Shown: positions 14,924 to 58,602, numbered from the stretch's first letter. The stretch is DNA of 64,000 nt from Scyliorhinus canicula (GCF_902713615.1 NC_052154.1:74209495-74273494); one strand, 5' to 3'. The notes: generated by a model from the letters alone, not told the origin. Numbers and translations are program-made.

Positions 14924-15423
14924 NNNNNNNNNNNNNNNNNNNNNNNNNNNNNNNNNNNNNNNNNNNNNNNNNNNNNNNNNNNNNNNNNNNNNNNNNNNNN
15001 NNNNNNNNNNNNNNNNNNNNNNNNNNNNNNNNNNNNNNNNNNNNNNNNNNNNNNNNNNNNNNNNNNNNNNNNNNNNNNNNNNNNNNNNNNNNNNNNNNNN
15101 NNNNNNNNNNNNNNNNNNNNNNNNNNNNNNNNNNNNNNNNNNNNNNNNNNNNNNNNNNNNNNNNNNNNNNNNNNNNNNNNNNNNNNNNNNNNNNNNNNNN
15201 NNNNNNNNNNNNNNNNNNNNNNNNNNNNNNNNNNNNNNNNNNNNNNNNNNNNNNNNNNNNNNNNNNNNNNNNNNNNNNNNNNNNNNNNNNNNNNNNNNNN
15301 NNNNNNNNNNNNNNNNNNNNNNNNNNNNNNNNNNNNNNNNNNNNNNNNNNNNNNNNNNNNNNNNNNNNNNNNNNNNNNNNNNNNNNNNNNNNNNNNNNNN
15401 NNNNNNNNNNNNNNNNNNNNNNN
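14924..15423. other. Assembly gap (500 N)
   Basis: Run of N; L1 on the left does not continue on the right. Confidence 1.
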
Positions 15424-32539: not shown

Positions 32540-32686
32540 AAACCACTTCTTCACGCACTTGATGAAGGAGATACCCTCCGAAAGCTAGTGATTCCAACTA
32601 AACCTGTTGGTCTTCAACCTGGTGTTGTAAGACTTCTTACTGTGCCCACCCCAGTCCAACACCGGCATCTCCACATCATGGCTTCC
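32540..32686 (+). mobile_element. Penelope pLTR 3' fragment
   Basis: GAAAGCTAGTG..CCTGGTGTTGTAAGACTTCTTACTGTGC..CATCTCCACATCA matches the pLTR of 52232-56154. Confidence 0.75.
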
Positions 32687-40515: not shown

Positions 40516-42115
40516 AATGTTTAAAATATGACCACAAATTTATGTGGTTCTTCATAGAATCATGCAAAAAAAAAAACGAACGTGGCCGTTCAGACCATCA
40601 TACCTATGCCAGCCCTTTGAAAGAGCTATTGAATTACTCCCAACCTGTTCAGATTTTTCTAATTAAATTGCTAGCTGTTGTGTTATTTGCTTCTGCCATT
40701 TTAGCCATTTTATTCTGTGCAGATAGTTTTCTCTGTCCATTACCCTCCCCTGTTTTCTGCTTCTCAATACAGCTGACACATTTACCATGATGTTCAAGAA
40801 CATTGTCTTCTGTCTCACAAATGGAACTGGGTAAAATGACGAGGTTATGAATTGGTACACACCTCAAATTGGTAGGGAGCTCCCAGGGATGCATACTGAC
40901 CATCAGACAATTGCCATGTGTTGCTATTGTAGAACATGCTGCCTGCTGAGGAGGAGATAGAAACCGGGCTTGGTGTTAGAACCACAATCTAATGCATCGT
41001 TGGGAACATCATGACTGCAGATGGGAAGAGAGGTTTGCTGTGTAACTCTAATCGGTGGTCATGGCAGTGGTTTAGGGTTTCAATGCACACTCAAGTGAGG
41101 GCAGATGTTACAACAGTGCACATAAATAAGAAAATAACCGCCATATTTTGATCTTAGCCTTGCGATTCTGGAAGGTGAATACATTACAGAGCCCAGAGAT
41201 CAAAGTCAGTGGTTTTAGTAATTGTTCAGTCTGCCCTGTGCAGCTCGAGAACTCAATGTGCAGATTTGATATAATGTATATCTCTGCTTTGTAAATTCTA
41301 TCAACGAAATAAAGGTTTCTATTTCTGTAACTGCAGTCACAGGGCGCACAATCACTTCAGTTTAAGTCACGCGGTGGACCGGATAAGTCCTCGTGCATTA
41401 AGTTTGCGTTCACACGTTTCTTAAAACTAAAATATTATTGCTACGTAAATATTAAAATGATTTGGATTTTCGGTGTTCAAAATGTGTCTTCAAACAGCCA
41501 AGCTCCTCAAGTCATCACATTTCATTGCCGTGCTGTAGATTCTCAGTGAGAATTCAGTGAATCTCTCCGGGCTGACAGAGGTTTGGCGGGAGATTCCAAA
41601 CCTTGCACCAGCCTCAGTAAGAAGCAGCCAATGTCGCCACCTCCTGGTGAAGTGGCGACATTGTGCAACTTGGTGGCTGTCGATTGGAATTCACATGTTA
41701 CACTGATTCAAGAGCCGGGTGAAGGGTCCCCCTCGGTTCCGTCCCACAGGCTCGGCGCATCTCCTAAACTCTGGGGAAGTTCAACACTGAGCAGGTCCAG
41801 AGGCTTTTAGCCAGTGCTGTGTGGTAGAAACTAGAAAGACCACCAATGGGGAAACCCTGGCACATTGTCAACCCCGGATCCGGAGTGTCAGTGAGCTGCA
41901 GAGTGGCCAGTTTGATATCGACATCGGTTCTACGCCCTCCAAAACACTGCCCTTCCAGCAAGGACTGGATCTCGTTTATTACTGGATCTGGGATGTATGA
42001 ATTGTTTTCGAGCTTACATTTGCTACTACAATAAAAGTACCAATTGTTAAATTACAGCAAGCGCAGATATCAGAGCAGGGCACACAGGACTTCACTAAAT
42101 GTTCAGAAATGTATT

Positions 42116-42454
42116 GTAAGAAGTCTTACAACACCAGGTTAAAGTCCAACATGTTCGTTTCAAACACTAGCTTTTGGAGCACTGCTCCTTCCTCAGGTGA
42201 ATAAAGAGCTATGTTCCAGAAACATATATATAGACAAATTCAAAGATGCCAGACAATGCTTAGAATGCGAGCATTTGCAGGTAATTCAGGAAGACTATGT
42301 CTATATCTATGTTTCTGGAACATACCTCTTCATTCACCTGAGGAAGGAGCAGTGCTCCGAAAGCTAGTGTTTGAAACAAACATGTTGGACTTTAACCTGG
42401 TGTTGTAAGACTTCTTACTGTGCTCACCCCAGTCCAACGCCGGCATCTCCACAT
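42116..42454 (+). mobile_element. Miniature Penelope-derived inverted-repeat element
   Basis: About 120-bp inverted pLTR arms, tail on one side only, flanking direct repeat CAGAAATGTATT (42104-42115 and 42455-42466). Confidence 0.85.
42335..42369 (+). ncRNA. Minimal type I hammerhead ribozyme motif
   Basis: CAC-CUGAGGA-A-GGAGC(AGU)GCUCC-GAAA-GCUA-GUG. Confidence 0.65.
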
Positions 42455-42909
42455 CAGAAATGTATTAGCAAAGGTTTCGGAGGGGGAATTGTTCAGCCGC
42501 TGTATATTCATAATTAAAAAAATAGGCACAGTCCTTGTTGCGTGCTGATTTCCGGATCATTTCCTCGGCCCCCTTCACCCCTGACTGTAAGTCAAAGTTT
42601 CCTTCACACCACATTGTATCCCTGACAGAGTTTTTAACAGGTCACAGTCTGAAATTCAATCAGTTTTTCATACACATCTAGAAAACCAGTGAGGGATGAT
42701 CACTTTAAAAATGGTTCCTCAGATAATGAAGCAGTCCATGTCCAAATGTAGCAACACCTGGACAATATCCAGGCTTGAGCGAACAAGTGACAAGTGGCCC
42801 CTTGATATTCAATGACATTACCACTGCTGAATCCCCACAATCAACATCCTGGGGGTTACCATTGATCAGAGACTGAACTGGACTAGCCATATTAATACTG
42901 TGGCTACCA

Positions 42910-43113
42910 GGGCAGTACCGTGGTGCAGTGGGTTAGCCCTGTTGCATCACGGCGCTGAGGTCCCAGGTTCGATTCTGGGTCACTGTCCGTGTGAAGTTTG
43001 CACATTCTCCCTGGGCTTGCGTGGGTTTTGCCCCACAACCCAAAGATGTGCAGGTTAAGTGGATTGGCCACGCTAAATTGCCCCTTAATTGGAAAATAAA
43101 TAAATAAATAAAA
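42910..43113 (+). mobile_element. V-SINE inserted in a CR1 fragment (duplicated near 45832-46035)
   Basis: Flanked by direct repeat AATACTGTGGCTACCA. Confidence 0.75.
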
Positions 43114-43523
43114 ATACTGTGGCTACCAGGGCAGGTCAAAGGTTAGGAATCCTATGGCGAGTAACTCACCTCCTAAAATAACCCTGGACATCTGAAAAAC
43201 AGTGTGAAATAAGTCTATGCTGTGAAGACAAGAGAGTGCAGTGGGACACAAGCCTGTCATTGACTACAAACATACCCCATAGTCAATCACTTTGGGGTTC
43301 TGTTGAAGATGATTGACCTGAACCCTCTTTCTCCATCCGCAGTTGATGTCAGCAGACCTGCTGATATTTCGAGCATTCTCTGTTCCTCATTCAGATTTTC
43401 AGCATCTGCAGCATTTTGCTTTTGTATTCGGACCCTTTTATTCCAGCTCAAAAAGAACAGCAACACTTGCAATCTATTGCAAAAGAGGGTGAACCAAAGT
43501 CATCTTTCAATTTAAATACTGAT

Positions 43524-43880
43524 CACAGAATCACAGATTTTACTGTGCATAAGGAGGCCATTTGGCCCATCGAGTCTGCACCAGCCCTTACAAAGAGCAC
43601 CCGAATGAAGCCCACGTATCGACCCTATCCCTGTAACCCAGTAACCCCCACTTAACATTGTTTGGACACAAAGGGCAATTTTAAACACGAAGGGCAATTT
43701 AGCATGGCAAATCCACCTAACCCGCACATCTTTGGACCGTGGGAGGAAACCGGAACACCCTGAGGAAACTCACGCGGACATTGGGAGAACATGCAGACTC
43801 CGCACAGACAGTGACCCAGCCAGGAATCGAAGCTGGAACTGTGAAGCAACTGCGCTAACCACTATGCTACTGTGCTGCCC
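43524..43880 (-). mobile_element. V-SINE with CR1-type tail (duplicated near 46446-46801)
   Basis: Antisense head, core and tail. Confidence 0.75.
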
Positions 43881-44306
43881 ACTCAATACAATTCAATTCA
43901 ATACTAAGCATGAAAACTCAAACCTCCAATCTGGCATGCATGTGAATCCAGATCTACAGCAATGTGGTTGACTCTTAAATGCCGCCTCTGGGCCACGCCC
44001 ACAGAATTAAAACAATTCGCAACTGCCTTGAAGATAACAAACCTCCACAAAGGAAAATAAATATCCAGAATTATACAGAGAAAGGTAATTTAAAAAAAAT
44101 CTTTTTTTAAATGTTCAATTCAATTTGGTGATTTTTCTGCTGAAGGTTTCAACATGTGGAAGTTAATTCACTTTTCATTTTGCTGATAAGTTTGAACAAT
44201 TCTAGTTGAGGTGATTGTGTTCCATGTTCAGTGATAATTGCTCATATTAGTCTGTGAAATATTTCTCTCTTCCGCTTAGCTCAGTAGTGAAAATGCTGGA
44301 GATACT

Positions 44307-47227
44307 AAGTCCTCGTGCATTAAGTTTGCGTTCACACGTTTCTTAAAACTAAAATATTATTGCTACGTAAATATTAAAATGATTTGGATTTTCGGTGTTC
44401 AAAATGTGTCTTCAAACAGCCAAGCTCCTCAAGTCATCACATTTCATTGCCGTGCTGTAGATTCTCAGTGAGAATTCAGTGAATCTCTCCGGGCTGACAG
44501 AGGTTTGGCGGGAGATTCCAAACCTTGCACCAGCCTCAGTAAGAAGCAGCCAATGTCGCCACCTCCTGGTGAAGTGGCGACATTGTGCAACTTGGTGGCT
44601 GTCGATTGGAATTCACATGTTACACTGATTCAAGAGCCGGGTGAAGGGTCCCCCTCGGTTCCGTCCCACAGGCTCGGCGCATCTCCTAAACTCTGGGGAA
44701 GTTCAACACTGAGCAGGTCCAGAGGCTTTTAGCCAGTGCTGTGTGGTAGAAACTAGAAAGACCACCAATGGGGAAACCCTGGCACATTGTCAACCCCGGA
44801 TCCGGAGTGTCAGTGAGCTGCAGAGTGGCCAGTTTGATATCGACATCGGTTCTACACCCTCCAAAACACTGCCCTTCCAGCAAGGACTGGATCTCGTTTA
44901 TTACTGGATCTGGGATGTATGAATTGTTTTCGAGTTTACATTTGCTACTACAATAAAAGTACCAATTGTTAAATTACAGCAAGCGCAGATATCAGAGCAG
45001 GGCACACAGGACTTCACTAAATGTTCAGAAATGTATTGTAAGAAGTCTTACAACACCAGGTTAAAGTCCAACATGTTGGTTTCAAACACTAGCTTTTGGA
45101 GCACTGCTCCTTCCTCAGGTGAATAAAGAGCTATGTTCCAGAAACATATATATAGACAAATTCAAAGATGCCAGACAATGCTTAGAATGCGAGCATTTGC
45201 AGGTAATTCAGGAAGACTATGTCTATATCTATGTTTCTGGAACATACCTCTTCATTCACCTGAGGAAGGAGCAGTGCTCCGAAAGCTAGTGTTTGAAACA
45301 AACATGTTGGACTTTAACCTGGTGGTGTAAGACTTCTTACTGTGCTCACCCCAGTCCAACGCCGGCATCTCCACATCAGAAATGTATTAGCAAAGGTTTC
45401 GGAGGGGGAATTGTTCAGCCGCTGTATATTCATAATAAAAAAAATAGGCACAGTCCTTGTTGCGTGCTGATTTCCGGATCATTTCCTCGGCCCCCTTCAC
45501 CCCTGACTGTAAGTCAAAGTTTCCTTCCCACCACATTGTATCCCTGACAGAGTTTTTAACAGGTCACAGTCTGAAATTCAATCAGTTTTTCATACACATC
45601 TAGAAAACCAGTGAGGGATGATCACTTTAAAAATGGTTCCTCAGATAATGAAGCAGTCCATGTCCAAATGTAGCAACACCTGGACAATATCCAGGCTTGA
45701 GCGAACAAGTGACAAGTGGCCCCTTGATATTCAATGACATTACCACTGCTGAATCCCCACAATCAACATCCTGGGGGTTACCATTGATCAGAGACTGAAC
45801 TGGACTAGCCATATTAATACTGTGGCTACCAGGGCAGTACCGTGGTGCAGTGGGTTAGCCCTGTTGCATCACGGCGCTGAGGTCCCAGGTTCGATTCTGG
45901 GTCACTGTCCGTGTGAAGTTTGCACATTCTCCCTGGGCTTGCGTGGGTTTTGCCCCACAACCCAAAGATGTGCAGGTTAAGTGGATTGGCCACGCTAAAT
46001 TGCCCCTTAATTGGAAAATAAATAAATAAATAAAAATACTGTGGCTACCAGGGCAGGTCAAAGGTTAGGAATCCTATGGCGAGTAACTCACCTCCTAAAA
46101 TAACTCTGGACATCTGAAAAACAGTGTGAAATAAGTCTATGCTGTGAAGACAAGAGAGTGCAGTGGGACACAAGCCTGTCATTGACTACAAACATACCCC
46201 ATAGTCAATCACTTTGGGGTTCTGTTGAAGATGATTGACCTGAACCCTCTTTCTCCATCCGCAGTTGATGTCAGCAGACCTGCTGATATTTCGAGCATTC
46301 TCTGTTCCTCATTCAGATTTTCAGCATCTGCAGCATTTTGCTTTTGTATTCGGACCCTTTTATTCCAGCTCAAAAAGAACAGCAACACTTGCAATCTATT
46401 GCAAAAGAGGGTGAACCAAAGTCATCTTTCAATTTAAATACTGATCACAGAATCACAGATTTTACTGTGCATAAGGAGGCCATTTGGCCCATCGAGTCTG
46501 CACCAGCCCTTACAAAGAGCACCCGAATGAAGCCCACGTATCGACCCTATCCCTGTAACCCAGTAACCCCCACTTAACATTGTTTGGACACAAAGGGCAA
46601 TTTTAGACACGAAGGGCAATTTAGCATGGCAAATCCACCTAACCCGCACATCTTTGGACCGTGGGAGGAAACCGGAACACCCTGAGGAAACTCACGCGGA
46701 CATTGGGAGAACATGCAGACTCCGCACAGACAGTGACCCAGCCAGGAATCGAAGCTGGAACTGTGAAGCAACTGCGCTAACCACTATGCTACTGTGCTGC
46801 CCACTCAATACAATTCAATTCAATACTAAGCATGAAAACTCAAACCTCCAATCTGGCATGCATGTGAATCCAGATCTACAGCAATGTGGTTGACTCTTAA
46901 ATGCCGCCTCTGGGCCACGCCCACAGAATTAAAACAATTCGCAACTGCCTTGAAGATAACAAACCTCCACAAAGGAAAATAAATATCCAGAATTATACAG
47001 AGAAAGGTAATTTAAAAAAATCTTTTTTTAAATGTTCAATTCAATTTGGTGATTTTTCTGCTGAAGGTTTCAACATGTGGAAGTTAATTCACTTTTCATT
47101 TTGCTGATAAGTTTGAACAATTCTAGTTGAGGTGATTGTGTTCCATGTTCAGTGATAATTGCTCATATTAGTCTGTGAAATATTTCTCTCTTCCGCTTAG
47201 CTCAGTAGTGAAAATGCTGGAGATACT
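44307..47227 (+). repeat. Tandem segmental duplication, copy 2
   Basis: Junction GAGATACT|AAGTCCTCG at 44306/44307. Confidence 0.95.
45038..45376 (+). mobile_element. Miniature Penelope-derived element (duplicate copy; hammerhead motif at 45257-45291)
   Basis: Copy of 42116-42454 within the duplication. Confidence 0.85.
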
Positions 47228-47319
47228 CACGCCTGGCGGTAACTATGGAGAGAGGCATTATCGTTTCAGATCACTGACCTCACACCAGAACTAGCCCAAT
47301 GAAAGAATTTGGCTCTTTA

Positions 47320-47905
47320 GAATCATAAGAATTTACAGTGCAGAAGGAGGCCATTCGGCCCATCAAGTCTGCACCGGCCCTTGAAAAGAGCACCACACAT
47401 AAGCCTATACCTCCACCCTATCCCCGTAACCCCACCTAACCTTTTTTGGACACTAAGGGCAATTTAGCATGGCCAATCCACCTAACCTGCACATCTTTGG
47501 ACTGTGGGAGGAAACCGGAGAACCCTTTTTAATTTTTTTTTTTTTAATTTTAGATTACCCAATTATTTTTTCCTATTAAGGGGCAATTTAGCGTGGCCGA
47601 TCCACCTATCCTGCACATCTTTGGGTTGTGGGGGCGAAACCCACGCAGACACGGGGAGAATGTGCAAACTCCTCACAGACAGTGACCCAGAGCCGGGATT
47701 CGAACCCGGGTCCTCAGCGCCGTAGACAGCAATGCTAACCACTGTGCCACCGTGCTGCCCCGAAACCGGAGAACCCTGAGGAAATCCACGCAAACACGGG
47801 GAGAACGTGCAGGTTCCGCACAGACAGTGACCCAAGCTGGGAATCAAACCTGGGACCCTGGAGCTGTGAAGCAACTATGCTGACCACTGCGCTACCGTGC
47901 TGCCC
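47320..47905 (-). mobile_element. V-SINE with a second V-SINE nested inside
   Basis: Inner copy (about 47526-47761) flanked by direct repeat GAAACCGGAGAACCCT. Confidence 0.75.
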
Positions 47906-51525: not shown

Positions 51526-51756
51526 GGGCAGCATGGTAGTACAGAGGTTAGCACTGTTGCTTCACAAGCGCCAAGGTCCCAGGTTCGATTCCCGGCTTGG
51601 GTCACTGTCTGGGCGGAGTCTGCATGTTCTCCCTGTGTCTGCGTGAGTTTCCTCCGGGTGCTCCGGTTTCCTCCCACAAGTCCCGAATTGTTGGGTGAAT
51701 TGGACATTCTGAATTCTCCCTCAGTGTACCTGAACAGGCGCCAGAGTGTGGCAACA
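51526..51756 (+). mobile_element. V-SINE 5' part; its tail resumes at about 57949-58020 after the L1 insertion
   Basis: Breaks at GTGTGGCAAC; continues as GGGATTTTC..GTAACGTCACTGCAGTG..AATAAAGATTAT. Confidence 0.7.
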
Positions 51757-52319
51757 TTTTTTTAATGCATTTTATTCAAACTTGTATCAAAGTAGGTTAC
51801 AGGAAATAACACACCGGGAAACATTCTTCCCAACAATCAACTATACAGTTTGTACAGATTTTTCTCCTTTTTCACTCCCCATCACCCTCTCTCTCCCCCC
51901 CCCCCCCCCCCCCCCCCCCCACAACCCTGCGACGAACAGCTCCTCAAACACGGTCACAAACATCCCCCACCTTTTCTCAAACTCCCCTGCTGAGCCCCTT
52001 AACTCATACTTTATCTTCTCTAACCACAGGAAGTCATACAGGTCACCCAACAATGCTGCTACCCCAGGTGGCGATGCCGACCCCCACTCCAGCAAAATTC
52101 ATAGCCTTGCAATCAGAGAGGCGAAGGCCAAGACATCGGCCTTCCTCCTCTCCTTGAGCTCCGGCTTTTCTGAAACCCCAAATATCGCCACCAAAAGGCC
52201 CGGGTCCACTCCCTCCTCCACTATCCTGGCTGAGATGTGGAGATGCCGGCGTTGGACTGGGGTGAGCACAGTAAGAAGTCTTACAACACCAGGTTAAAGT
52301 CCAACAGGTTTGTTTCAAA

Positions 52320-52354
52320 CACGAGCTTTCGGAGCACGGCTCCTTCTTCAGGTG
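52320..52354 (-). ncRNA. Minimal type I hammerhead ribozyme motif in the pLTR
   Basis: Mirror image of 56070-56104. Confidence 0.7.
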
Positions 52355-52499
52355 AATGGAAAGGCTTGTTCCAGAAATGTTTATATAGACACAGTCAGAG
52401 ATGCCCCGGAATGCGAGCACCTGCAGGCAATCAAATCATCAAAGATGCAGAGAGAGAGGTAACTCCAGGTTAAAGAGGTGTGAATTGTCCCAAGCCAGT

Positions 52500-54212
52500 T
52501 CAGTCGGTAGGCCTCTGCAAGTCCAGGCTTGTTGGTGGGGGCCGAATGTAATGCGACATGAATCCCAGATCCCGGTTGAGTCCGCATTCATGCGTGCGAA
52601 ACTTAGCTATAAGTTTTTGCTCAGCAATTTTGCGTTGTCGCGTCTCCTGAAGGCCTCCTTGTAGAATGCTGACCCGGAGATCAGAGGCTGAATGTCCTTG
52701 ACTGCTAAAGTGTTCCCCAACTGGAAGGGAACAGTCCTGCCTGTTGATAGTCGCACGATGCCCGTTTATTCGTTGTTGCAGTGTCTGCATGGTCTCGCCA
52801 ATGTACCACGCTTCGGGACATCCTTTCCTGCAGCGTATGAGGTAGACTACATTGGTCGAGTCGCACGAGTATGCGCCGCGTACCTGGTGGGTGGTGTTTC
52901 CACGTGTAATGGTGGTGTCCATGTCGATGATCTGGCATGTCTTGCAGAGATTACCCTGGCAGGGTTTTGTGGTGTTGTGGTTGCTGTTCTGAAGGCTGGG
53001 TAATTTGCTGCAAACAATGGTTTGTTTGAGGTTGCGCGGTTGTTTGAAGGCCAGTAGTGGGGGTGTGGGGATGACCTTGGCAAGATGTCCATCCTCGCTG
53101 ATGATGTGTTGGAGGCTGCGAAGAAGATGTCGTAGTTTCTCCGCCCCAGGAAAGTACTGGACGACGAAGGGTACTCTGTCAGTGGTGTCCCGTGTTTGTC
53201 TTCTGAGGAGGTCGGTGCGGTTTTTTGCTGTGGCGCGGTGGAACTGTCGATCAATGAGTCGAGCGCCATATCCCGTTCGTACGAGGGCATCTTTCAGCAT
53301 CTGTAGGTGTCTGTTGCGCTCCTCCTTGTCTGAGCAGATCCTGTGTATACGGAGGGCTTGTCCATAGGGGATGGCTTCTTTAATGTGTTTCGGGTGAAAG
53401 CTGGAGAAGTGGAGCATCGTGAGATTATCTGTGGGCTTGCGGTAAAGCGAGGTGCTGAGGTGACCGTCCTTGATGGAGACGAGTGTGTCCAAGAATGGAA
53501 CTGAATTTGGAGAATAGTCCATGGTGAGTTTGATGGTGGGATGGAACTTATTGATGTCATCGTGTAGTCGTTTCAGTGATGTCTCGCCGTGGGTCCAAAG
53601 GAAAAAAATGTCATCGATGTATCTGGTGTATAGCATCGGTTGAAAGTCCTGTGTGGTGAGGAAGTCCTGTTCAAACTTGTGCATGAAGATGTTGGCATAT
53701 TGAGGTGCAAATTTGGTCCCCATGGCTGTTCCGTGCGTCTGGATGAAGAATTTGTTGTCGAAGGTGAAGACGTTGTGGTCTAGAATGAAACGGATGAGTT
53801 GCAGAATTGCGTCTGGAGATTGGCAGTTGTCGGTGTTGAGGACTGAGGCTGTTGCAGCAATGCCGTCGTCATGGGGGATGCTGGTGTAGAGTGCCGAGAC
53901 ATCCATTGTGACGAGGAATGTTCCTGGTTCAACTGGTCCATGGGTGCTGAGTTTCTGTAGGAAGTCCGTCGTGTCGCGACAGAAGCTGGGTGTACCTTGT
54001 ACGATGGGTTTCAAGATGCCCTCGATGTGGCCAGAGAGGTTCTCACACGGGGTCCCATTGCCTGAAACGATAGGACGGCCTGGTGTGTTGGCCTTGTGTA
54101 TTTTCGGGAGGCAGTAGAGATCTCCAATGCGGGGATTACGTGGGATGAGAGCACGTAGGGTGTTCTGAAGGTCTGGATCTAAGGTCTTGATCAGTCTGCT
54201 GAGTTGGCGGAC
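52500..54212 (-). CDS. Penelope RT plus GIY-YIG endonuclease, N-terminally truncated, uninterrupted frame
   Basis: LPKIHK, MDVSALYTSIP, GTAMG, RYIDD, NVVYLIRC..YIGET..RINGH, EQKLI. Confidence 0.85.
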   Translation of the reverse strand, partial: VRQLSRLIKTLDPDLQNTLRALIPRNPRIGDLYCLPKIHKANTPGRPIVSGNGTPCENLSGHIEGILKPIVQGTPSFCRDTTDFLQKLSTHGPVEPGTFLVTMDVSALYTSIPHDDGIAATASVLNTDNCQSPDAILQLIRFILDHNVFTFDNKFFIQTHGTAMGTKFAPQYANIFMHKFEQDFLTTQDFQPMLYTRYIDDIFFLWTHGETSLKRLHDDINKFHPTIKLTMDYSPNSVPFLDTLVSIKDGHLSTSLYRKPTDNLTMLHFSSFHPKHIKEAIPYGQALRIHRICSDKEERNRHLQMLKDALVRTGYGARLIDRQFHRATAKNRTDLLRRQTRDTTDRVPFVVQYFPGAEKLRHLLRSLQHIISEDGHLAKVIPTPPLLAFKQPRNLKQTIVCSKLPSLQNSNHNTTKPCQGNLCKTCQIIDMDTTITRGNTTHQVRGAYSCDSTNVVYLIRCRKGCPEAWYIGETMQTLQQRINGHRATINRQDCSLPVGEHFSSQGHSASDLRVSILQGGLQETRQRKIAEQKLIAKFRTHECGLNRDLGFMSHYIRPPPTSLDLQRPTD

Positions 54213-55924
54213 GTCCGCCAACTCAGCAGACTGATCAAGACCTTAGATCCAGACCTTCAGAACACCCTACGTGCTCTCATCCCACGTAATCCCCGCATTG
54301 GAGATCTCTACTGCCTCCCGAAAATACACAAGGCCAACACACCAGGCCGTCCTATCGTTTCAGGCAATGGGACCCTGTGTGAGAACCTCTCTGGCCACAT
54401 CGAGGGCATCTTGAAACCCATCGTACAAGGTACACCCAGCTTCTGTCGCGACACGACGGACTTCCTACAGAAACTCAGCACCCATGGACCAGTTGAACCA
54501 GGAACATTCCTCGTCACAATGGATGTCTCGGCACTCTACACCAGCATCCCCCATGACGACGGCATTGCTGCAACAGCCTCAGTCCTCAACACCGACAACT
54601 GCCAATCTCCAGACGCAATTCTGCAACTCATCCGTTTCATTCTAGACCACAACGTCTTCACCTTCGACAACAAATTCTTCATCCAGACGCACGGAACAGC
54701 CATGGGGACCAAATTTGCACCTCAATATGCCAACATCTTCATGCACAAGTTTGAACAGGACTTCCTCACCACACAGGACTTTCAACCGATGCTATACACC
54801 AGATACATCGATGACATTTTTTCCTTTGGACCCACGGCGAGACATCACTGAAACGACTACACGATGACATCAATAAGTTCCATCCCACCATCAAACTCAC
54901 CATGGACTATTCTCCAAATTCAGTTCCATTCTTGGACACACTCGTCTCCATCAAGGACGGTCACCTCAGCACCTCGCTTTACCGCAAGCCCACAGATAAT
55001 CTCACGATGCTCCACTTCTCCAGCTTTCACCCGAAACACATTAAAGAAGCCATCCCCTATGGACAAGCCCTCCGTATACACAGGATCTGCTCAGACAAGG
55101 AGGAGCGCAACAGACACCTACAGATGCTGAAAGATGCCCTCGTACGAACGGGATATGGCGCTCGACTCATTGATCGACAGTTCCACCGCGCCACAGCAAA
55201 AAACCGCACCGACCTCCTCAGAAGACAAACACGGGACACCACTGACAGAGTACCCTTCGTCGTCCAGTACTTTCCTGGGGCGGAGAAACTACGACACCTT
55301 CTTCGCAGCCTCCAACACATCATCAGCGAGGATGGACATCTTGCCAAGGTCATCCCCACACCCCCACTACTGGCCTTCAAACAACCGCGCAACCTCAAAC
55401 AAACCATTGTTTGCAGCAAATTACCCAGCCTTCAGAACAGCAACCACAACACCACAAAACCCTGCCAGGGTAATCTCTGCAAGACATGCCAGATCATCGA
55501 CATGGACACCACCATTACACGTGGAAACACCACCCACCAGGTACGCGGCGCATACTCGTGCGACTCGACCAATGTAGTCTACCTCATACGCTGCAGGAAA
55601 GGATGTCCCGAAGCGTGGTACATTGGCGAGACCATGCAGACACTGCAACAACGAATAAACGGGCATCGTGCGACTATCAACAGGCAGGACTGTTCCCTTC
55701 CAGTTGGGGAACACTTCAGCAGTCAAGGACATTCAGCCTCTGATCTCCGGGTCAGCATTCTACAAGGAGGCCTTCAGGAGACGCGACAACGCAAAATTGC
55801 TGAGCAAAAACTTATAGCTAAGTTCCGCACGCATGAATGCGGACTCAACCGGGATCTGGGATTCATGTCGCATTACATTCGGCCCCCACCAACAAGCCTG
55901 GACTTGCAGAGGCCTACCGACTGA
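54213..55924 (+). pseudogene. Mirror copy of the Penelope ORF with a 1-nt frameshift
   Basis: T6 here versus A7 in the left arm, just after RYIDD; ORF split into 54204-54851 and 54902-55924. Confidence 0.85.
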
Positions 55925-56069
55925 ACTGGCTTGGGACAATTCACACCTCTTTAACCTGGAGTTACCTCTCTCTCTGCATCTTTGATGATTTGATTGCCTG
56001 CAGGTGCTCGCATTCCGGGGCATCTCTGACTGTGTCTATATAAACATTTCTGGAACAAGCCTTTCCATT

Positions 56070-56104
56070 CACCTGAAGAAGGAGCCGTGCTCCGAAAGCT
56101 CGTG
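56070..56104 (+). ncRNA. Minimal type I hammerhead ribozyme motif in the pLTR
   Basis: CAC-CUGAAGA-A-GGAGC(CGU)GCUCC-GAAA-GCUC-GUG: conserved core, perfect stem II, short stem I. Confidence 0.7.
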
Positions 56105-58602
56105 TTTGAAACAAACCTGTTGGACTTTAACCTGGTGTTGTAAGACTTCTTACTATCCTGGCTAAGACAGCGAACACTCCCGCCCAGAATCTTCTCAATT
56201 TTTCACAACCCCAAAACATGTGCGCATGATTCGCTGGCCCACACCCACATCTCTCACACTCATCTGCTACCCCCTGAAAGAACCCCCTCATTCTCGCCCG
56301 TGTCATATGCACCCTGTGTACCACCTTAAACTGTATCAGGCTCATCCTTGCACAAGAGGAGGTCCCGTTTACCCTATGCAGTGCCTCACTCCATATTCCC
56401 CAATTGATCTCCATTCCCAACTCCGCTTCCCATTTCTCCTTGATCTTCACCACCCACTCGCCTCCCTGTTCCCCCGGCCACTTATATATATCCCCAATTC
56501 TTCCCTCCTCTTCCACATCCAGAAGCAACAGTCGCTCCAGCCGGGTGTATCCCAGCAATCTAGGGAACCCCCTCCAGACCTTTTGTGCAAAGTCCTTAAC
56601 CTGTAGATACCTGAACTCACTACCCCTCGGCAGCTCTACCCTCTCCCTTAGCTCCTCCAGACTGACGAACGCTTCCTCCAAATACAGATCCCTCACCTTG
56701 ACCAGCCCCACTTCCCTCCACCTCCTGTATACACTATCCATCCCCTCCGGCTCAAACCCATGATTCTCGCACAGCGGCATTAGCACCAACATCCCTTCCA
56801 CCCTAAAATGCCTCCTCAGCTGATTCCATATCTTCACTGTGGACTGCACCGCTGGGCTCCTTGAATACCTACTTGGAGTCATTGGCAATGCTGCTATCAC
56901 CATAGCCCTCAAACTAGACGCCTTACAAGATTCCTCCTCCATCCTAACCCACTCTACCCCTTCTCCTTCCCACCACCGCCGCACCTTGTCAACATTCGCC
57001 GCCCAATAATAATGAAGCAAGTTTGGCAACGCCAACCCCCCATGCTGCCTCTACCTCTGTATCAGTGTCCTCCCCCCCCCCCGGTACCTTTGCTGCCCAT
57101 ACAAAGTCAGAGATGATTGTGTCCACTTTCCGAAAAAAGATCTTTGGTATAAAGAACGGGAGAGCCTGAAAGATATACAAAAACCTCGGCAGAATATTCA
57201 TTTTCAACACTTGGACCCACCCTGCCAGTGTTAAGTGCAATGTATCCCACCTCTTAAGATCCTTCCTGGCCTCCTCCACCAGCTTTGTTAAGCTCCACTT
57301 ATGGAGCCCCGTCCATTCCCTTGCTATCTGAATCCCCAAGTACCTAAACCTATCCCTCGCTACCGTAAATGGCACCCCCCCTAAATTAGCCCGCTGTGCC
57401 AGCTCATTCACCGGGAATGCCTCGCTTTTCCCTACATTCAGCTTGTATCCCGAGAAACCTCCAAACCTCCCCAACAGGCCCATAATCCTTCCCATACTCT
57501 CCAACAGATCTGAAACATACAGCAGGAAGTCATCGGCATAGAGCGACACGCGATGCTCCCTCTGTCCCCTCATTATCCCCTGTCACTCTGCCGACCCCCT
57601 GAGAATCATCGCCAACGGCTCTATGGCCAGCGCAAACAGCAGCGGCGACAGCGAGCACCCCTGCCTCGTACCCCTGTGTAAGTCAAAGCTTCGTCAGCTC
57701 ATATCATTCATCCTCACCCTCGCTCTTGGCACCACATACAGCAACAACACCCATGCCAGAAATCTCGGCCCAAACCCAAACCTTCCCAAAACTTCAAACA
57801 AGTACCGCCACTCCACCCGATCAAATGCTTTCTCTGCGTCCATGGACACCACCACCTCCGGTACCAGAGCTCTCGAAGGATTCATCACCACATTCAACAG
57901 CCGTCTTATATTACTCGCGATCTGCCTGCCCTTCACGAAGCCTGTTTGATCTGGGATTTTCTTGGTAACGTCACTGCAGTGTTAACTTGTGACACTAATA
58001 AAGATTATAAAGATTATTATTAGTAGTAGTACATGTTGTAGCGCAATGTTCCAGAAACGTAATGGAGAATTCAAAGTGAAAGCACACGGAGATCAATGAT
58101 GTTGATCCGTTGACCAAAAAGAAGCAGAAGGCTGTCACCAACTTGACTGCTCAGTAGAACCTTTCAACTTAGTCATGCCAGTAAAATGCTGTTGTTTTCA
58201 AATGAAACGAGATTAGGTGGAAAGATGGAATACTTTGATCAATGTATTTCATCAGAAAGTGATTGCAATTTTCAAATTCATTTCAACTAAGAGAGGATGC
58301 TGCAAGGAGATTCAGGTGAGTTAGAAGACACAATGTGGTCCACATTTGGTGTAGTTGTGCAACAAAGCGAGGGTGAGGTTAGAAAGGCAGAGTTGAAGAG
58401 GACACAGTGGAGGAAATAGATCAATTGGAAGGGATGCTTTGTGAAGCTGGCAGACATTTAATTTAATGGGTCAATGTTTTGTATAAAAGCAAAATATCGC
58501 GGATGCTGGAAATCTGAAATGAAACAGAAAATTCTGGGGAAACCCAGCAGTTCTGGCACCATATGTGGAGAGAAAAACAAGAGTTAAAATTTTGAGTCCG
58601 CA

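What the first reader, a model, noticed from the sequence alone, without database searches (positions are those of the whole stretch)
52232..56154. 3.9-kb spacer-less palindrome made by a single Penelope insertion
Seen: arms of 1943 and 1942 bp meet with zero spacer at GGAC|GTCC (54212/54213). By eye they differ by about four substitutions and one homopolymer indel. A single 12-bp TSD flanks the pair and the host L1 continues correctly on both sides; only one arm has the pLTR tail. Established: Penelope insertions often carry a short inverted 5' pLTR; long perfect palindromes are unstable, form cruciforms and yield dsRNA. Inference: the whole truncated cDNA was copied by fold-back or second-strand synthesis, an extreme form of the usual inversion that is informative on integration mechanism. 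The non-mirrored flanks and arm differences argue against a simple fold-back read artefact.
Basis: partly seen in the sequence, partly recalled or inferred. Interest (0 to 1): 0.75.

Follow-up and report, generated by a model that had tools for sequence, protein, structure and literature searches.

The report
Head-to-head Penelope retrotransposon palindrome in catshark
Two mirror-image, front-truncated copies of a shark Penelope-like retrotransposon sit back to back inside one target-site duplication; it is a clean, large example of an insertion form already described for these elements, not a new process.

Summary
Window 52232-56154 is a palindrome with no spacer. The arms are 1981 nt (including a 38-nt tail) and 1942 nt, and they differ by four transitions and one A-run indel. 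The pair lies inside one 9-12-bp target-site duplication in a decayed LINE ORF2, which reads in frame across the empty site.

Each arm is the 3' two-thirds of a Penelope-like element (PLE). It carries a reverse transcriptase (RT), a CCHH/GIY-YIG endonuclease and a minimal hammerhead motif. The 3' ends point outward.

Head-to-head inverted 5'-truncated copies, with a 30-40-bp tail at one end only, are a published PLE hallmark. An older mini-pair of the same family in this window (42116-42457) has the same layout. Earlier notes of this scan report the same form elsewhere in this genome, including a 5-kb palindrome.

Both outer ends fall at the family's two usual termini. I therefore favour priming of reverse transcription from both nicked target strands, as shown in vitro for an anole PLE, with both cDNAs running to one RNA 5' end.

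Only Logan contigs of a very high-copy family were available, so reads neither confirm nor refute the axis. Structural logic makes an assembly artefact unlikely.

Verdict: a real new member of a known kind, of modest interest.

The parts
52220..52231 (.). Left copy of the target-site duplication (actatcctggct)
   Evidence: The same 12-mer occurs at 56152-56163.
52232..52269 (-). 38-nt PLE tail, present on the left arm only. It is the outermost 3' end of the element.
   Evidence: The alignment shows no counterpart on the right arm. The same tail sequence ends the older copies at 42419-42457 and about 32643-32677. A one-sided tail of 30-40 bp is described in PMC8557442 and PMC11167929.
52270..54211 (-). 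Left arm: a 5'-truncated PLE copy, sense on the minus strand
   Evidence: Private changes relative to the family majority lie at 52707 and 54049.
52500..54212 (-). Open partial ORF of the left arm, 570 codons from the axis to the stop. It contains RT (YIDD), a Cys-rich motif and GIY-YIG.
   Evidence: Pfam RVT_1 E=4.6e-10. GIY-YIG E=2.3e-4, 21.8 bits, on the C-terminal 152 aa.
52324..52351 (-). Minimal hammerhead core motif (CTGAAGA, a 5-bp helix II, GAAAGCT) in the left arm
   Evidence: 4 matches in the window against 0.04 expected. The architecture is as described in PMC4209133. Rfam models do not detect it.
54212..54213 (.). Symmetry axis: a C|G pair that does not match the family majority
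   Evidence: Family contigs diverge after 54211 and before 54214, and the family has T at 54212 (tables 7 and 8).
54214..56154 (+). Right arm: the same 5'-truncated PLE copy, sense on the plus strand, without a tail. The ORF is broken by a 1-nt deletion in an A run at about 54823.
   Evidence: first stop at codon 212. Private changes lie at 55297 and 55825, plus the deletion.
56073..56100 (+). Minimal hammerhead core motif in the right arm
56152..56163 (.). Right copy of the target-site duplication. Its first 3 nt (act) overlap the end of the element.
56164..57700 (-). Host LINE (L1-like) ORF2 upstream of the insertion: the YADD reverse-transcriptase end and a Cys/His knuckle. It is decayed, with stops.
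   Evidence: Pfam RVT_1 E=4.3e-5 and zf-RVT E=0.03.
51700..52231 (-). Host LINE ORF2 C-terminal part downstream of the insertion, in frame with the part at 56164 onward once one duplication copy is removed
   Evidence: frame arithmetic. A contig of a LINE relative in run X2 runs straight across the site without the insertion (table 7).
42116..42457 (.). Older, independent mini head-to-head pair of the same family. It has its own duplication (agaaatgtatt), a tail on the right arm only, and a tail-less arm that ends at the same element position.
   Evidence: It was copied again at 45038-45377 by a 2.9-kb tandem duplication.

Best explanation
This is a real product of one integration event of an active catshark Penelope-like element (PLE).

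Shown:
- Two copies of the same 5'-truncated element lie head to head with their 3' ends outward.
- The pair sits inside a single 9-12-bp target-site duplication.
- One outer end is at the family's tailed terminus and the other at its tail-less terminus.

Inferred:
- The element's endonuclease made staggered nicks. Both target 3'-OH ends primed reverse transcription on element RNA, one at each of the two adjacent start sites that define the tail.
- Both cDNAs ran to the same physical 5' end of a truncated RNA. Each gained one extra C, either untemplated or opposite a cap.
- The two ends were joined end to end, by template jump or by blunt joining. That gives arms of equal length with no spacer.

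The insertion is dead on arrival. It lacks the N-terminal part of the ORF and any upstream repeat. One arm still has an open 570-codon frame, and the other has a frameshift.
For: Structure: searches give the arm coordinates, the zero spacer and the differences.

Element identity:
- RT.
- GIY-YIG.
- Hammerhead core motif in each arm.

Single event:
- There is one duplication.
- The host ORF2 is in frame across the empty site.
- An uninterrupted LINE relative is seen in run X2.

Usual termini:
- An older independent pair at 42116-42457 has the same layout. Its tail-less arm ends at the same ...cttcttac, and its tail ends at ...ccacatc.
- A solo fragment at about 32556-32677 carries the same tail.
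- The tail-less junction has 3 nt (act) shared between the element RNA and the target end, as expected for priming on RNA.

Literature:
- An inverted 5'-truncated copy and a one-sided 30-40-bp tail are typical of PLEs (PMC8557442).
- Head to head is the most frequent arrangement, with palindromes at the junction (PMC3846280).
- The purified anole PLE protein cleaves and extends both strands, and starts reverse transcription at two sites whose interval is the tail (PMC11167929).

Arm differences: two private changes lie on each arm relative to the family majority. This fits independent copying or later mutation.

Earlier unchecked scan notes report the same form at other loci of this genome.
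Against: - No read or contig was shown to bridge the axis. Only Logan contigs were available, and the family is so abundant that locus-specific words are lost.
- Equal truncation of two independently primed cDNAs needs a shared RNA 5' end, which is assumed and not shown.
- The symmetric non-family C|G at the axis needs the same extra base on both cDNAs, or a variant in the source copy. Copying one arm from the other explains it more simply.
- Three nucleotides of microhomology are weak evidence.
- The in vitro data come from a lizard element, not this family.
Confidence: 0.55

Rival explanations
1. Fold-back copying, the first reader's idea and the self-priming idea of Arkhipova et al. 2013. 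One cDNA is made from the tailed end. At the RNA 5' end the enzyme turns and copies the nascent cDNA back toward the target. The second arm is therefore a copy of the first.
For: - Equal arms and a symmetric extra C|G at the axis follow automatically.
- PMC3846280 interprets palindromes at inverted PLE junctions as self-priming.
Against: - A self-primed hairpin needs a loop and a few paired bases, so it should leave an asymmetric centre. Here the symmetry is perfect to the axis.
- Nothing in this model stops the return copy 38 nt short, at the family's usual tail-less terminus.
- Two changes are private to the presumed template arm. These would all have to be later mutations.
Confidence: 0.25
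2. Assembly artefact at the centre. The locus truly holds two inverted copies next to the two flanks. A chimeric fold-back long read made the assembler skip a central spacer or longer inner arm parts, which created a false perfect axis.
For: - No contig bridging 54212/54213 was shown.
- PLE tandem and inverted structures are known to trouble assemblies (PMC8557442).
- The A-run indel could be a polishing error.
Against: - The flanks are not mirrored. They carry one duplication and the two usual element termini.
- An artefact could therefore only alter the centre.
- The arms keep distinct private substitutions.
- The same spacer-less form is reported at other loci by earlier scan notes (unchecked).
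- Such forms are described in other species.
Confidence: 0.1
3. Retrotransposition of an already palindromic transcript. A read-through RNA of an older head-to-head copy was reverse transcribed in one pass.
For: It would give equal arms and a symmetric axis. Bidirectional promoter motifs in pLTRs were proposed in PMC3846280.
Against: - A 1.9-kb perfect RNA hairpin is a poor template.
- The far end would have to coincide with a usual terminus.
- Other palindromes noted in this genome have different arm lengths, so they do not share one axis.
Confidence: 0.05
4. Two independent insertions, or a later inverted duplication of a single truncated copy.
For: PLEs can target their own sequences (PMC11167929).
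Against: - There is one duplication only, and the truncation points are identical to the nucleotide. The chance of that is roughly 1 in a few thousand for independent events.
- A DNA-level inverted duplication would not end at the element's usual terminus next to the duplicated target.
Confidence: 0.03

Closest known systems
Canonical endonuclease-positive Penelope-like elements (Penelope/Poseidon, Neptune) and their complex tandem/inverted insertions (Craig et al. 2021, PMC8557442; Arkhipova et al. 2013, PMC3846280)
   Same: - RT plus a C-terminal GIY-YIG endonuclease.
- A minimal hammerhead in the terminal region.
- An inverted 5'-truncated copy joined head to head.
- A one-sided tail of 30-40 bp.
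- A short target-site duplication and heavy 5' truncation.
   Different: Here both copies are truncated at the same nucleotide, so the entire 3.9-kb insertion is a palindrome. The usual form is a short inverted pLTR next to a longer direct copy. There is no direct pLTR. The clade within PLEs was not determined.
Two-strand cleavage and extension with two internal RT start sites, in the anole Poseidon element PAc in vitro (PMC11167929)
   Same: - One arm ends with the tail and the other without it, as expected if each target strand primed at one of the two start sites.
- The geometry of the nicks (3' overhangs spanning the duplication) allows both 3'-OH ends to prime.
   Different: The published work is an in vitro assay on a lizard element with short templates. 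The joining step and the full products were not characterised there. Nothing was tested biochemically here.
   Same: Both staggered target 3' ends prime reverse transcription in one event, which gives an inverted segment inside one target-site duplication.
   Different: In L1 the second primer anneals internally, so the inverted and direct segments are different parts of the RNA. Here both arms start at the element's 3' region and cover the same 1.94 kb. The enzyme family is also different.
Long spacer-less DNA palindromes as fragile or cruciform-forming sequences; recalled from my own knowledge
   Same: A perfect inverted repeat of kilobase scale with no spacer.
   Different: Its origin is retrotransposition, not breakage and fusion or amplification. 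It has apparently persisted long enough to gather five differences. Instability was not tested.

Membership tests
Penelope-like element (endonuclease-positive, canonical domain order) | Reverse transcriptase domain | tested here: met
   Pfam RVT_1 E=4.6e-10 on the left-arm ORF and 2.6e-9 on the right arm. A YIDD motif is visible. Placement in the PLE/TERT-related RT clade by phylogeny was not done.
Penelope-like element (endonuclease-positive, canonical domain order) | C-terminal GIY-YIG endonuclease preceded by a Cys-rich (CCHH-type) motif | tested here: met
   Pfam GIY-YIG E=2.3e-4, 21.8 bits, on the C-terminal 152 aa. This is 0.8 bit below Pfam's gathering score. The motifs ...VVYLIRC...WYIGET... 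and CQGNLCKTC are visible.
Penelope-like element (endonuclease-positive, canonical domain order) | Minimal type-I hammerhead motif in the terminal repeat region | tested here: met
   The core CTGAAGA, a 5-bp helix II, then GAAA followed by the palindromic AGCT occurs once per arm and in the older copies. There are 4 matches against 0.04 expected. The architecture matches PMC4209133. Rfam hammerhead models do not hit it. Cleavage was not tested.
Penelope-like element (endonuclease-positive, canonical domain order) | Terminal repeats (pLTRs) in direct or inverted orientation, with an inverted 5'-truncated copy joined head to head | tested here: met
   The inverted form is present, since the whole arms are the repeat. 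No direct pLTR is present, as expected for copies truncated within the ORF.
Penelope-like element (endonuclease-positive, canonical domain order) | [quoted passage not shown] | tested here: met
   A 38-nt tail lies at 52232-52269 only. The same tail is found on one arm of the pair at 42116-42457 and on the fragment at about 32643-32677.
Penelope-like element (endonuclease-positive, canonical domain order) | Target-site duplication flanking the whole unit | tested here: met
   The duplication is 9-12 bp. The host frame is continuous across the empty site.
L1-type twin priming | The second primer anneals internally, so the inverted and direct segments are different parts of the RNA | tested here: not met
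   Both arms cover the same element interval from the 3' region to one truncation point. It may work like twin priming but is not the L1 form.
Self-primed (snap-back) hairpin cDNA | Asymmetric loop of a few nucleotides at the turn, or microhomology that allows the 3' end to fold on itself | tested here: not met
   Symmetry is perfect to the axis and only a self-complementary CG lies in the centre. The family sequence offers a GGA...TCC fold with a 5-nt loop, but the observed junction does not correspond to it (reasoning in the report).
microRNA precursor (mir-3913, mir-3047) | Score at or above the Rfam gathering threshold | tested here: not met
   The scores are 77.8 against 100 bits and 39.3 against 53 bits, with identical hits on both strands. 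Any perfect hairpin scores like this.

The most novel reading that the evidence does not exclude
Equal-arm, spacer-less pairs such as this one may be natural footprints of a coupled two-strand integration. In that reading a dimeric PLE particle primes on both nicked strands, both cDNAs run off one defined RNA 5' end (possibly capped, hence the extra C:G), and the ends are joined directly. A census of these pairs in the catshark genome could then resolve the still unknown second half of the PLE integration cycle. It would also show that a vertebrate germ line tolerates kilobase-scale perfect palindromes over evolutionary time.
Probability: 0.3. Interest if true: 0.55.

Novelty: new member of a known kind. 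Interest (0 to 1): 0.3.

Why it matters
The second half of PLE integration is not understood: how the two target ends are joined, and why tandem and inverted structures and a one-sided tail arise. This young, almost undecayed copy records four things in one place:

- both outer termini;
- a junction microhomology;
- an exact shared truncation point;
- one extra base pair at the axis.

On its own it is one more example of a described form. Its value is as a data point for a genome-wide census that could separate priming from both strands from fold-back copying. It also warns that kilobase palindromes in this assembly are probably biological, and that annotation pipelines will mislabel them.

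Tried and rejected
- **Rfam scans**. No hammerhead family was hit. The only strong hits, mir-3913 and mir-3047, fall below gathering, score the same on both strands and merely reflect a perfect hairpin, so I rejected them.
- **Reads**. Only Logan contigs were on offer, with no raw or long reads. The family's word depth is 10^4 to 10^6. No bridging contig for the axis or the left junction was listed. Single-copy variants (for example G at 54049) are absent from contigs, as expected after bubble and tip removal. This neither supports nor refutes the assembly.
- **PDB sequence search** with the ORF: no hit.
- **Pfam on the immediate flank ORFs**: no hit. Identification of the host needed the reading and the weaker hits.
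- **Literature search** for 'twin priming' together with Penelope: nothing relevant.
- **Big protein searches.** Not run, because the operators flagged them as costly and the protein's identity was not in doubt. The PLE clade (Poseidon, Neptune or other) is therefore undetermined.
- **Rejected scenarios.** I considered and rejected two independent insertions, a DNA-level inverted duplication, and copying of a palindromic transcript. See the rival explanations.
- **Transition bias.** All four arm differences are transitions (three T>C and one C>T on the sense strand). I considered RNA editing, but four sites are too few to say anything.
Full report
**Observation**

The inverted-repeat search finds two abutting perfect segments, 52265-53607 with 54817-56159 and 53598-54212 with 54213-54827. 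There are 0 nt between the inner arms.

A global alignment of 52232-54212 with the reverse complement of 54213-56170 shows the following:

- four substitutions: 52599/55825, 52707/55717, 53127/55297 and 54049/54376;
- one 1-nt indel in an A run: 53602 against 54823;
- 38 nt (52232-52269) that only the left arm has.

The axis reads ...ggcgga C|G tccgcc.... The 12-mer actatcctggct lies at 52220-52231 and 56152-56163. Its first three letters on the right side are also the last three letters of the element. The duplication is therefore 9-12 bp with up to 3 nt of microhomology.

**What the arms are**

The sense strand of the left arm is the minus strand, and that of the right arm is the plus strand. 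The copies therefore lie head to head with their 3' ends outward.

- The left arm is open for 570 codons from the axis to a stop at 52500. The right arm stops at codon 212 because of the A-run deletion.
- Pfam finds RVT_1 on both arms, E=4.6e-10 and 2.6e-9.
- Pfam finds GIY-YIG on the C-terminal 152 residues, E=2.3e-4 and 21.8 bits, just under the 22.6-bit cut-off.
- YIDD, a Cys-rich motif and ...YLIRC...WYIGET... are visible.
- Each arm carries CTGAAGA, a 5-bp helix II, then GAAA followed by the palindromic AGCT. This is the minimal, dimer-type hammerhead described for these elements in PMC4209133. The pattern occurs 4 times in the window against 0.04 expected, always in copies of this family.
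- Rfam's hammerhead models miss the motif.

This is a canonical endonuclease-positive Penelope-like element (PLE), truncated within the RT region. Contigs of the family continue at least 1 kb beyond the axis (record 24), so full-length copies exist. An earlier scan note identifies the genome as a catshark.

**Host and single event**

On the minus strand, the right flank ends ...FWAGVFAV. After removal of one duplication copy, the next codons read ...ARIVEEGVDPG..., in the same frame. Upstream lie a YADD reverse-transcriptase end (RVT_1 E=4.3e-5) and a weak zf-RVT match. The host is a decayed L1-like LINE ORF2. A contig from a related species (run X2) runs through a relative of this LINE without the insertion (table 7).

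Three features mark a single integration event:

- one duplication;
- non-mirrored flanks;
- two arms cut at the same nucleotide.

Independent truncations would coincide about once in a few thousand.

**Is the form unusual?**

No. The literature already describes it.

- PMC3846280 calls head to head the most frequent arrangement. It notes palindromes at the inverted junction, which it interprets as self-priming.

This window holds an older, independent mini-pair of the same family at 42116-42457. It has its own duplication (agaaatgtatt) and a tail on one arm only. Its tail-less arm ends at the same ...cttcttac as here. That pair was later copied to 45038-45377 by a 2.9-kb tandem duplication. 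A solo fragment with the same tail lies at about 32556-32677.

Earlier notes of this scan are unchecked leads. They report the same form on other pieces of this genome, including a 5-kb palindrome with a 12-bp duplication and several mini versions. The 3.9-kb case is a large, clean example. It is neither unique nor the largest reported.

**Mechanism**

The staggered nicks leave both target 3'-OH ends overhanging the duplicated 9-12 nt.

- The plus-strand end is continuous with the antisense of the tail.
- The minus-strand end is continuous with the antisense of the tail-less terminus, and shares AGT with it.

PMC11167929 shows that a purified anole PLE protein cleaves and extends both strands. 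It also shows that reverse transcription starts at two adjacent internal sites whose interval is the tail. Both outer ends of this insertion, and of the older pair, sit at those two usual termini. This is what priming from both strands predicts. A return copy along the first cDNA has no reason to stop 38 nt short.

A self-primed hairpin should also leave an asymmetric loop, and none is seen.

Equal arms then require both cDNAs to end at one RNA 5' end. Family contigs leave the window sequence after 54211, and in mirror image before 54214. The family has T where the window has C. The axis pair C|G is therefore either one extra base on each cDNA (untemplated or opposite a cap) or a variant of the source copy.

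The symmetry of that pair is the best argument for the rival view that one arm was copied from the other. I put priming from both strands ahead of fold-back copying, but neither is shown.

**Arm differences and age**

Relative to the family majority:

- the left arm is private at 52707 and 54049;
- the right arm is private at 55297 and 55825, and carries the A-run deletion.

Three of the four substitutions are synonymous, and one changes Leu to Pro in the left arm. All four are transitions. Two changes per arm fit either reverse-transcription errors in separate copies or later mutation. About 0.1% change per site points to a young insertion. The source family is young and very abundant, with thousands of contigs at 99% identity or more.

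**Artefact question**

Only Logan contigs were available. No listed contig bridges the axis, and single-copy variants vanish in a family this abundant. The reads are silent on the question.

The logic is stronger than the reads. A fold-back chimeric read would mirror the flank. Here the two flanks are different, continuous with each other, and each adjoins a usual element terminus. Two inverted copies must therefore exist at this locus, and only the exact centre could be wrong. I give an altered centre about 10%.

**Verdict**

The single-event Penelope reading is supported. The preference for fold-back is not supported, and neither is the claim that this is an extreme case.

This is a new member of a known kind. 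It is useful mainly as a data point for a census of such pairs.

Noticed in passing
window 42116-42457 and 45038-45377: An older (about 90% to the young copy) mini head-to-head pair of the same PLE family. It has its own 11-12-bp duplication and a one-sided tail. It is present twice because it lies inside a tandem duplication with a period of about 2.92 kb.
   Followed up: partly
window 41384-47234: Tandem duplication with a period of 2921-2922 bp, in blocks that are 98-100% identical. Its extent and copy number were not worked out.
   Followed up: no
window 32556-32677: A solo 5'-truncated 3' fragment of a related PLE subfamily. It has a variant hammerhead core (CTTGATGA...GAAAGCT) and the same tail sequence, and no inverted partner.
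   Followed up: partly
window 52224-52385 (and its mirror): The last approximately 150 nt of the element have 10-20 times the word depth of the ORF body in every run laid (table 2). The genome therefore holds far more short 3'-end copies or mini elements than long copies.
   Followed up: no
window 54155-54270: Rfam mir-3913 and mir-3047 score on both strands of the palindrome centre, below gathering. This is a false lead produced by any perfect hairpin.
   Followed up: yes
window 45896-46018 and 47457-47691: Inverted pairs of a 60-66-nt repeat (…aaagatgtgcaggttaagtggattggcc…) at 87-94% identity, about 1.5 kb apart. It looks like a common interspersed repeat and was not identified.
   Followed up: no
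window 14924-15423: A run of 500 N (an assembly gap), far from the finding.
   Followed up: no
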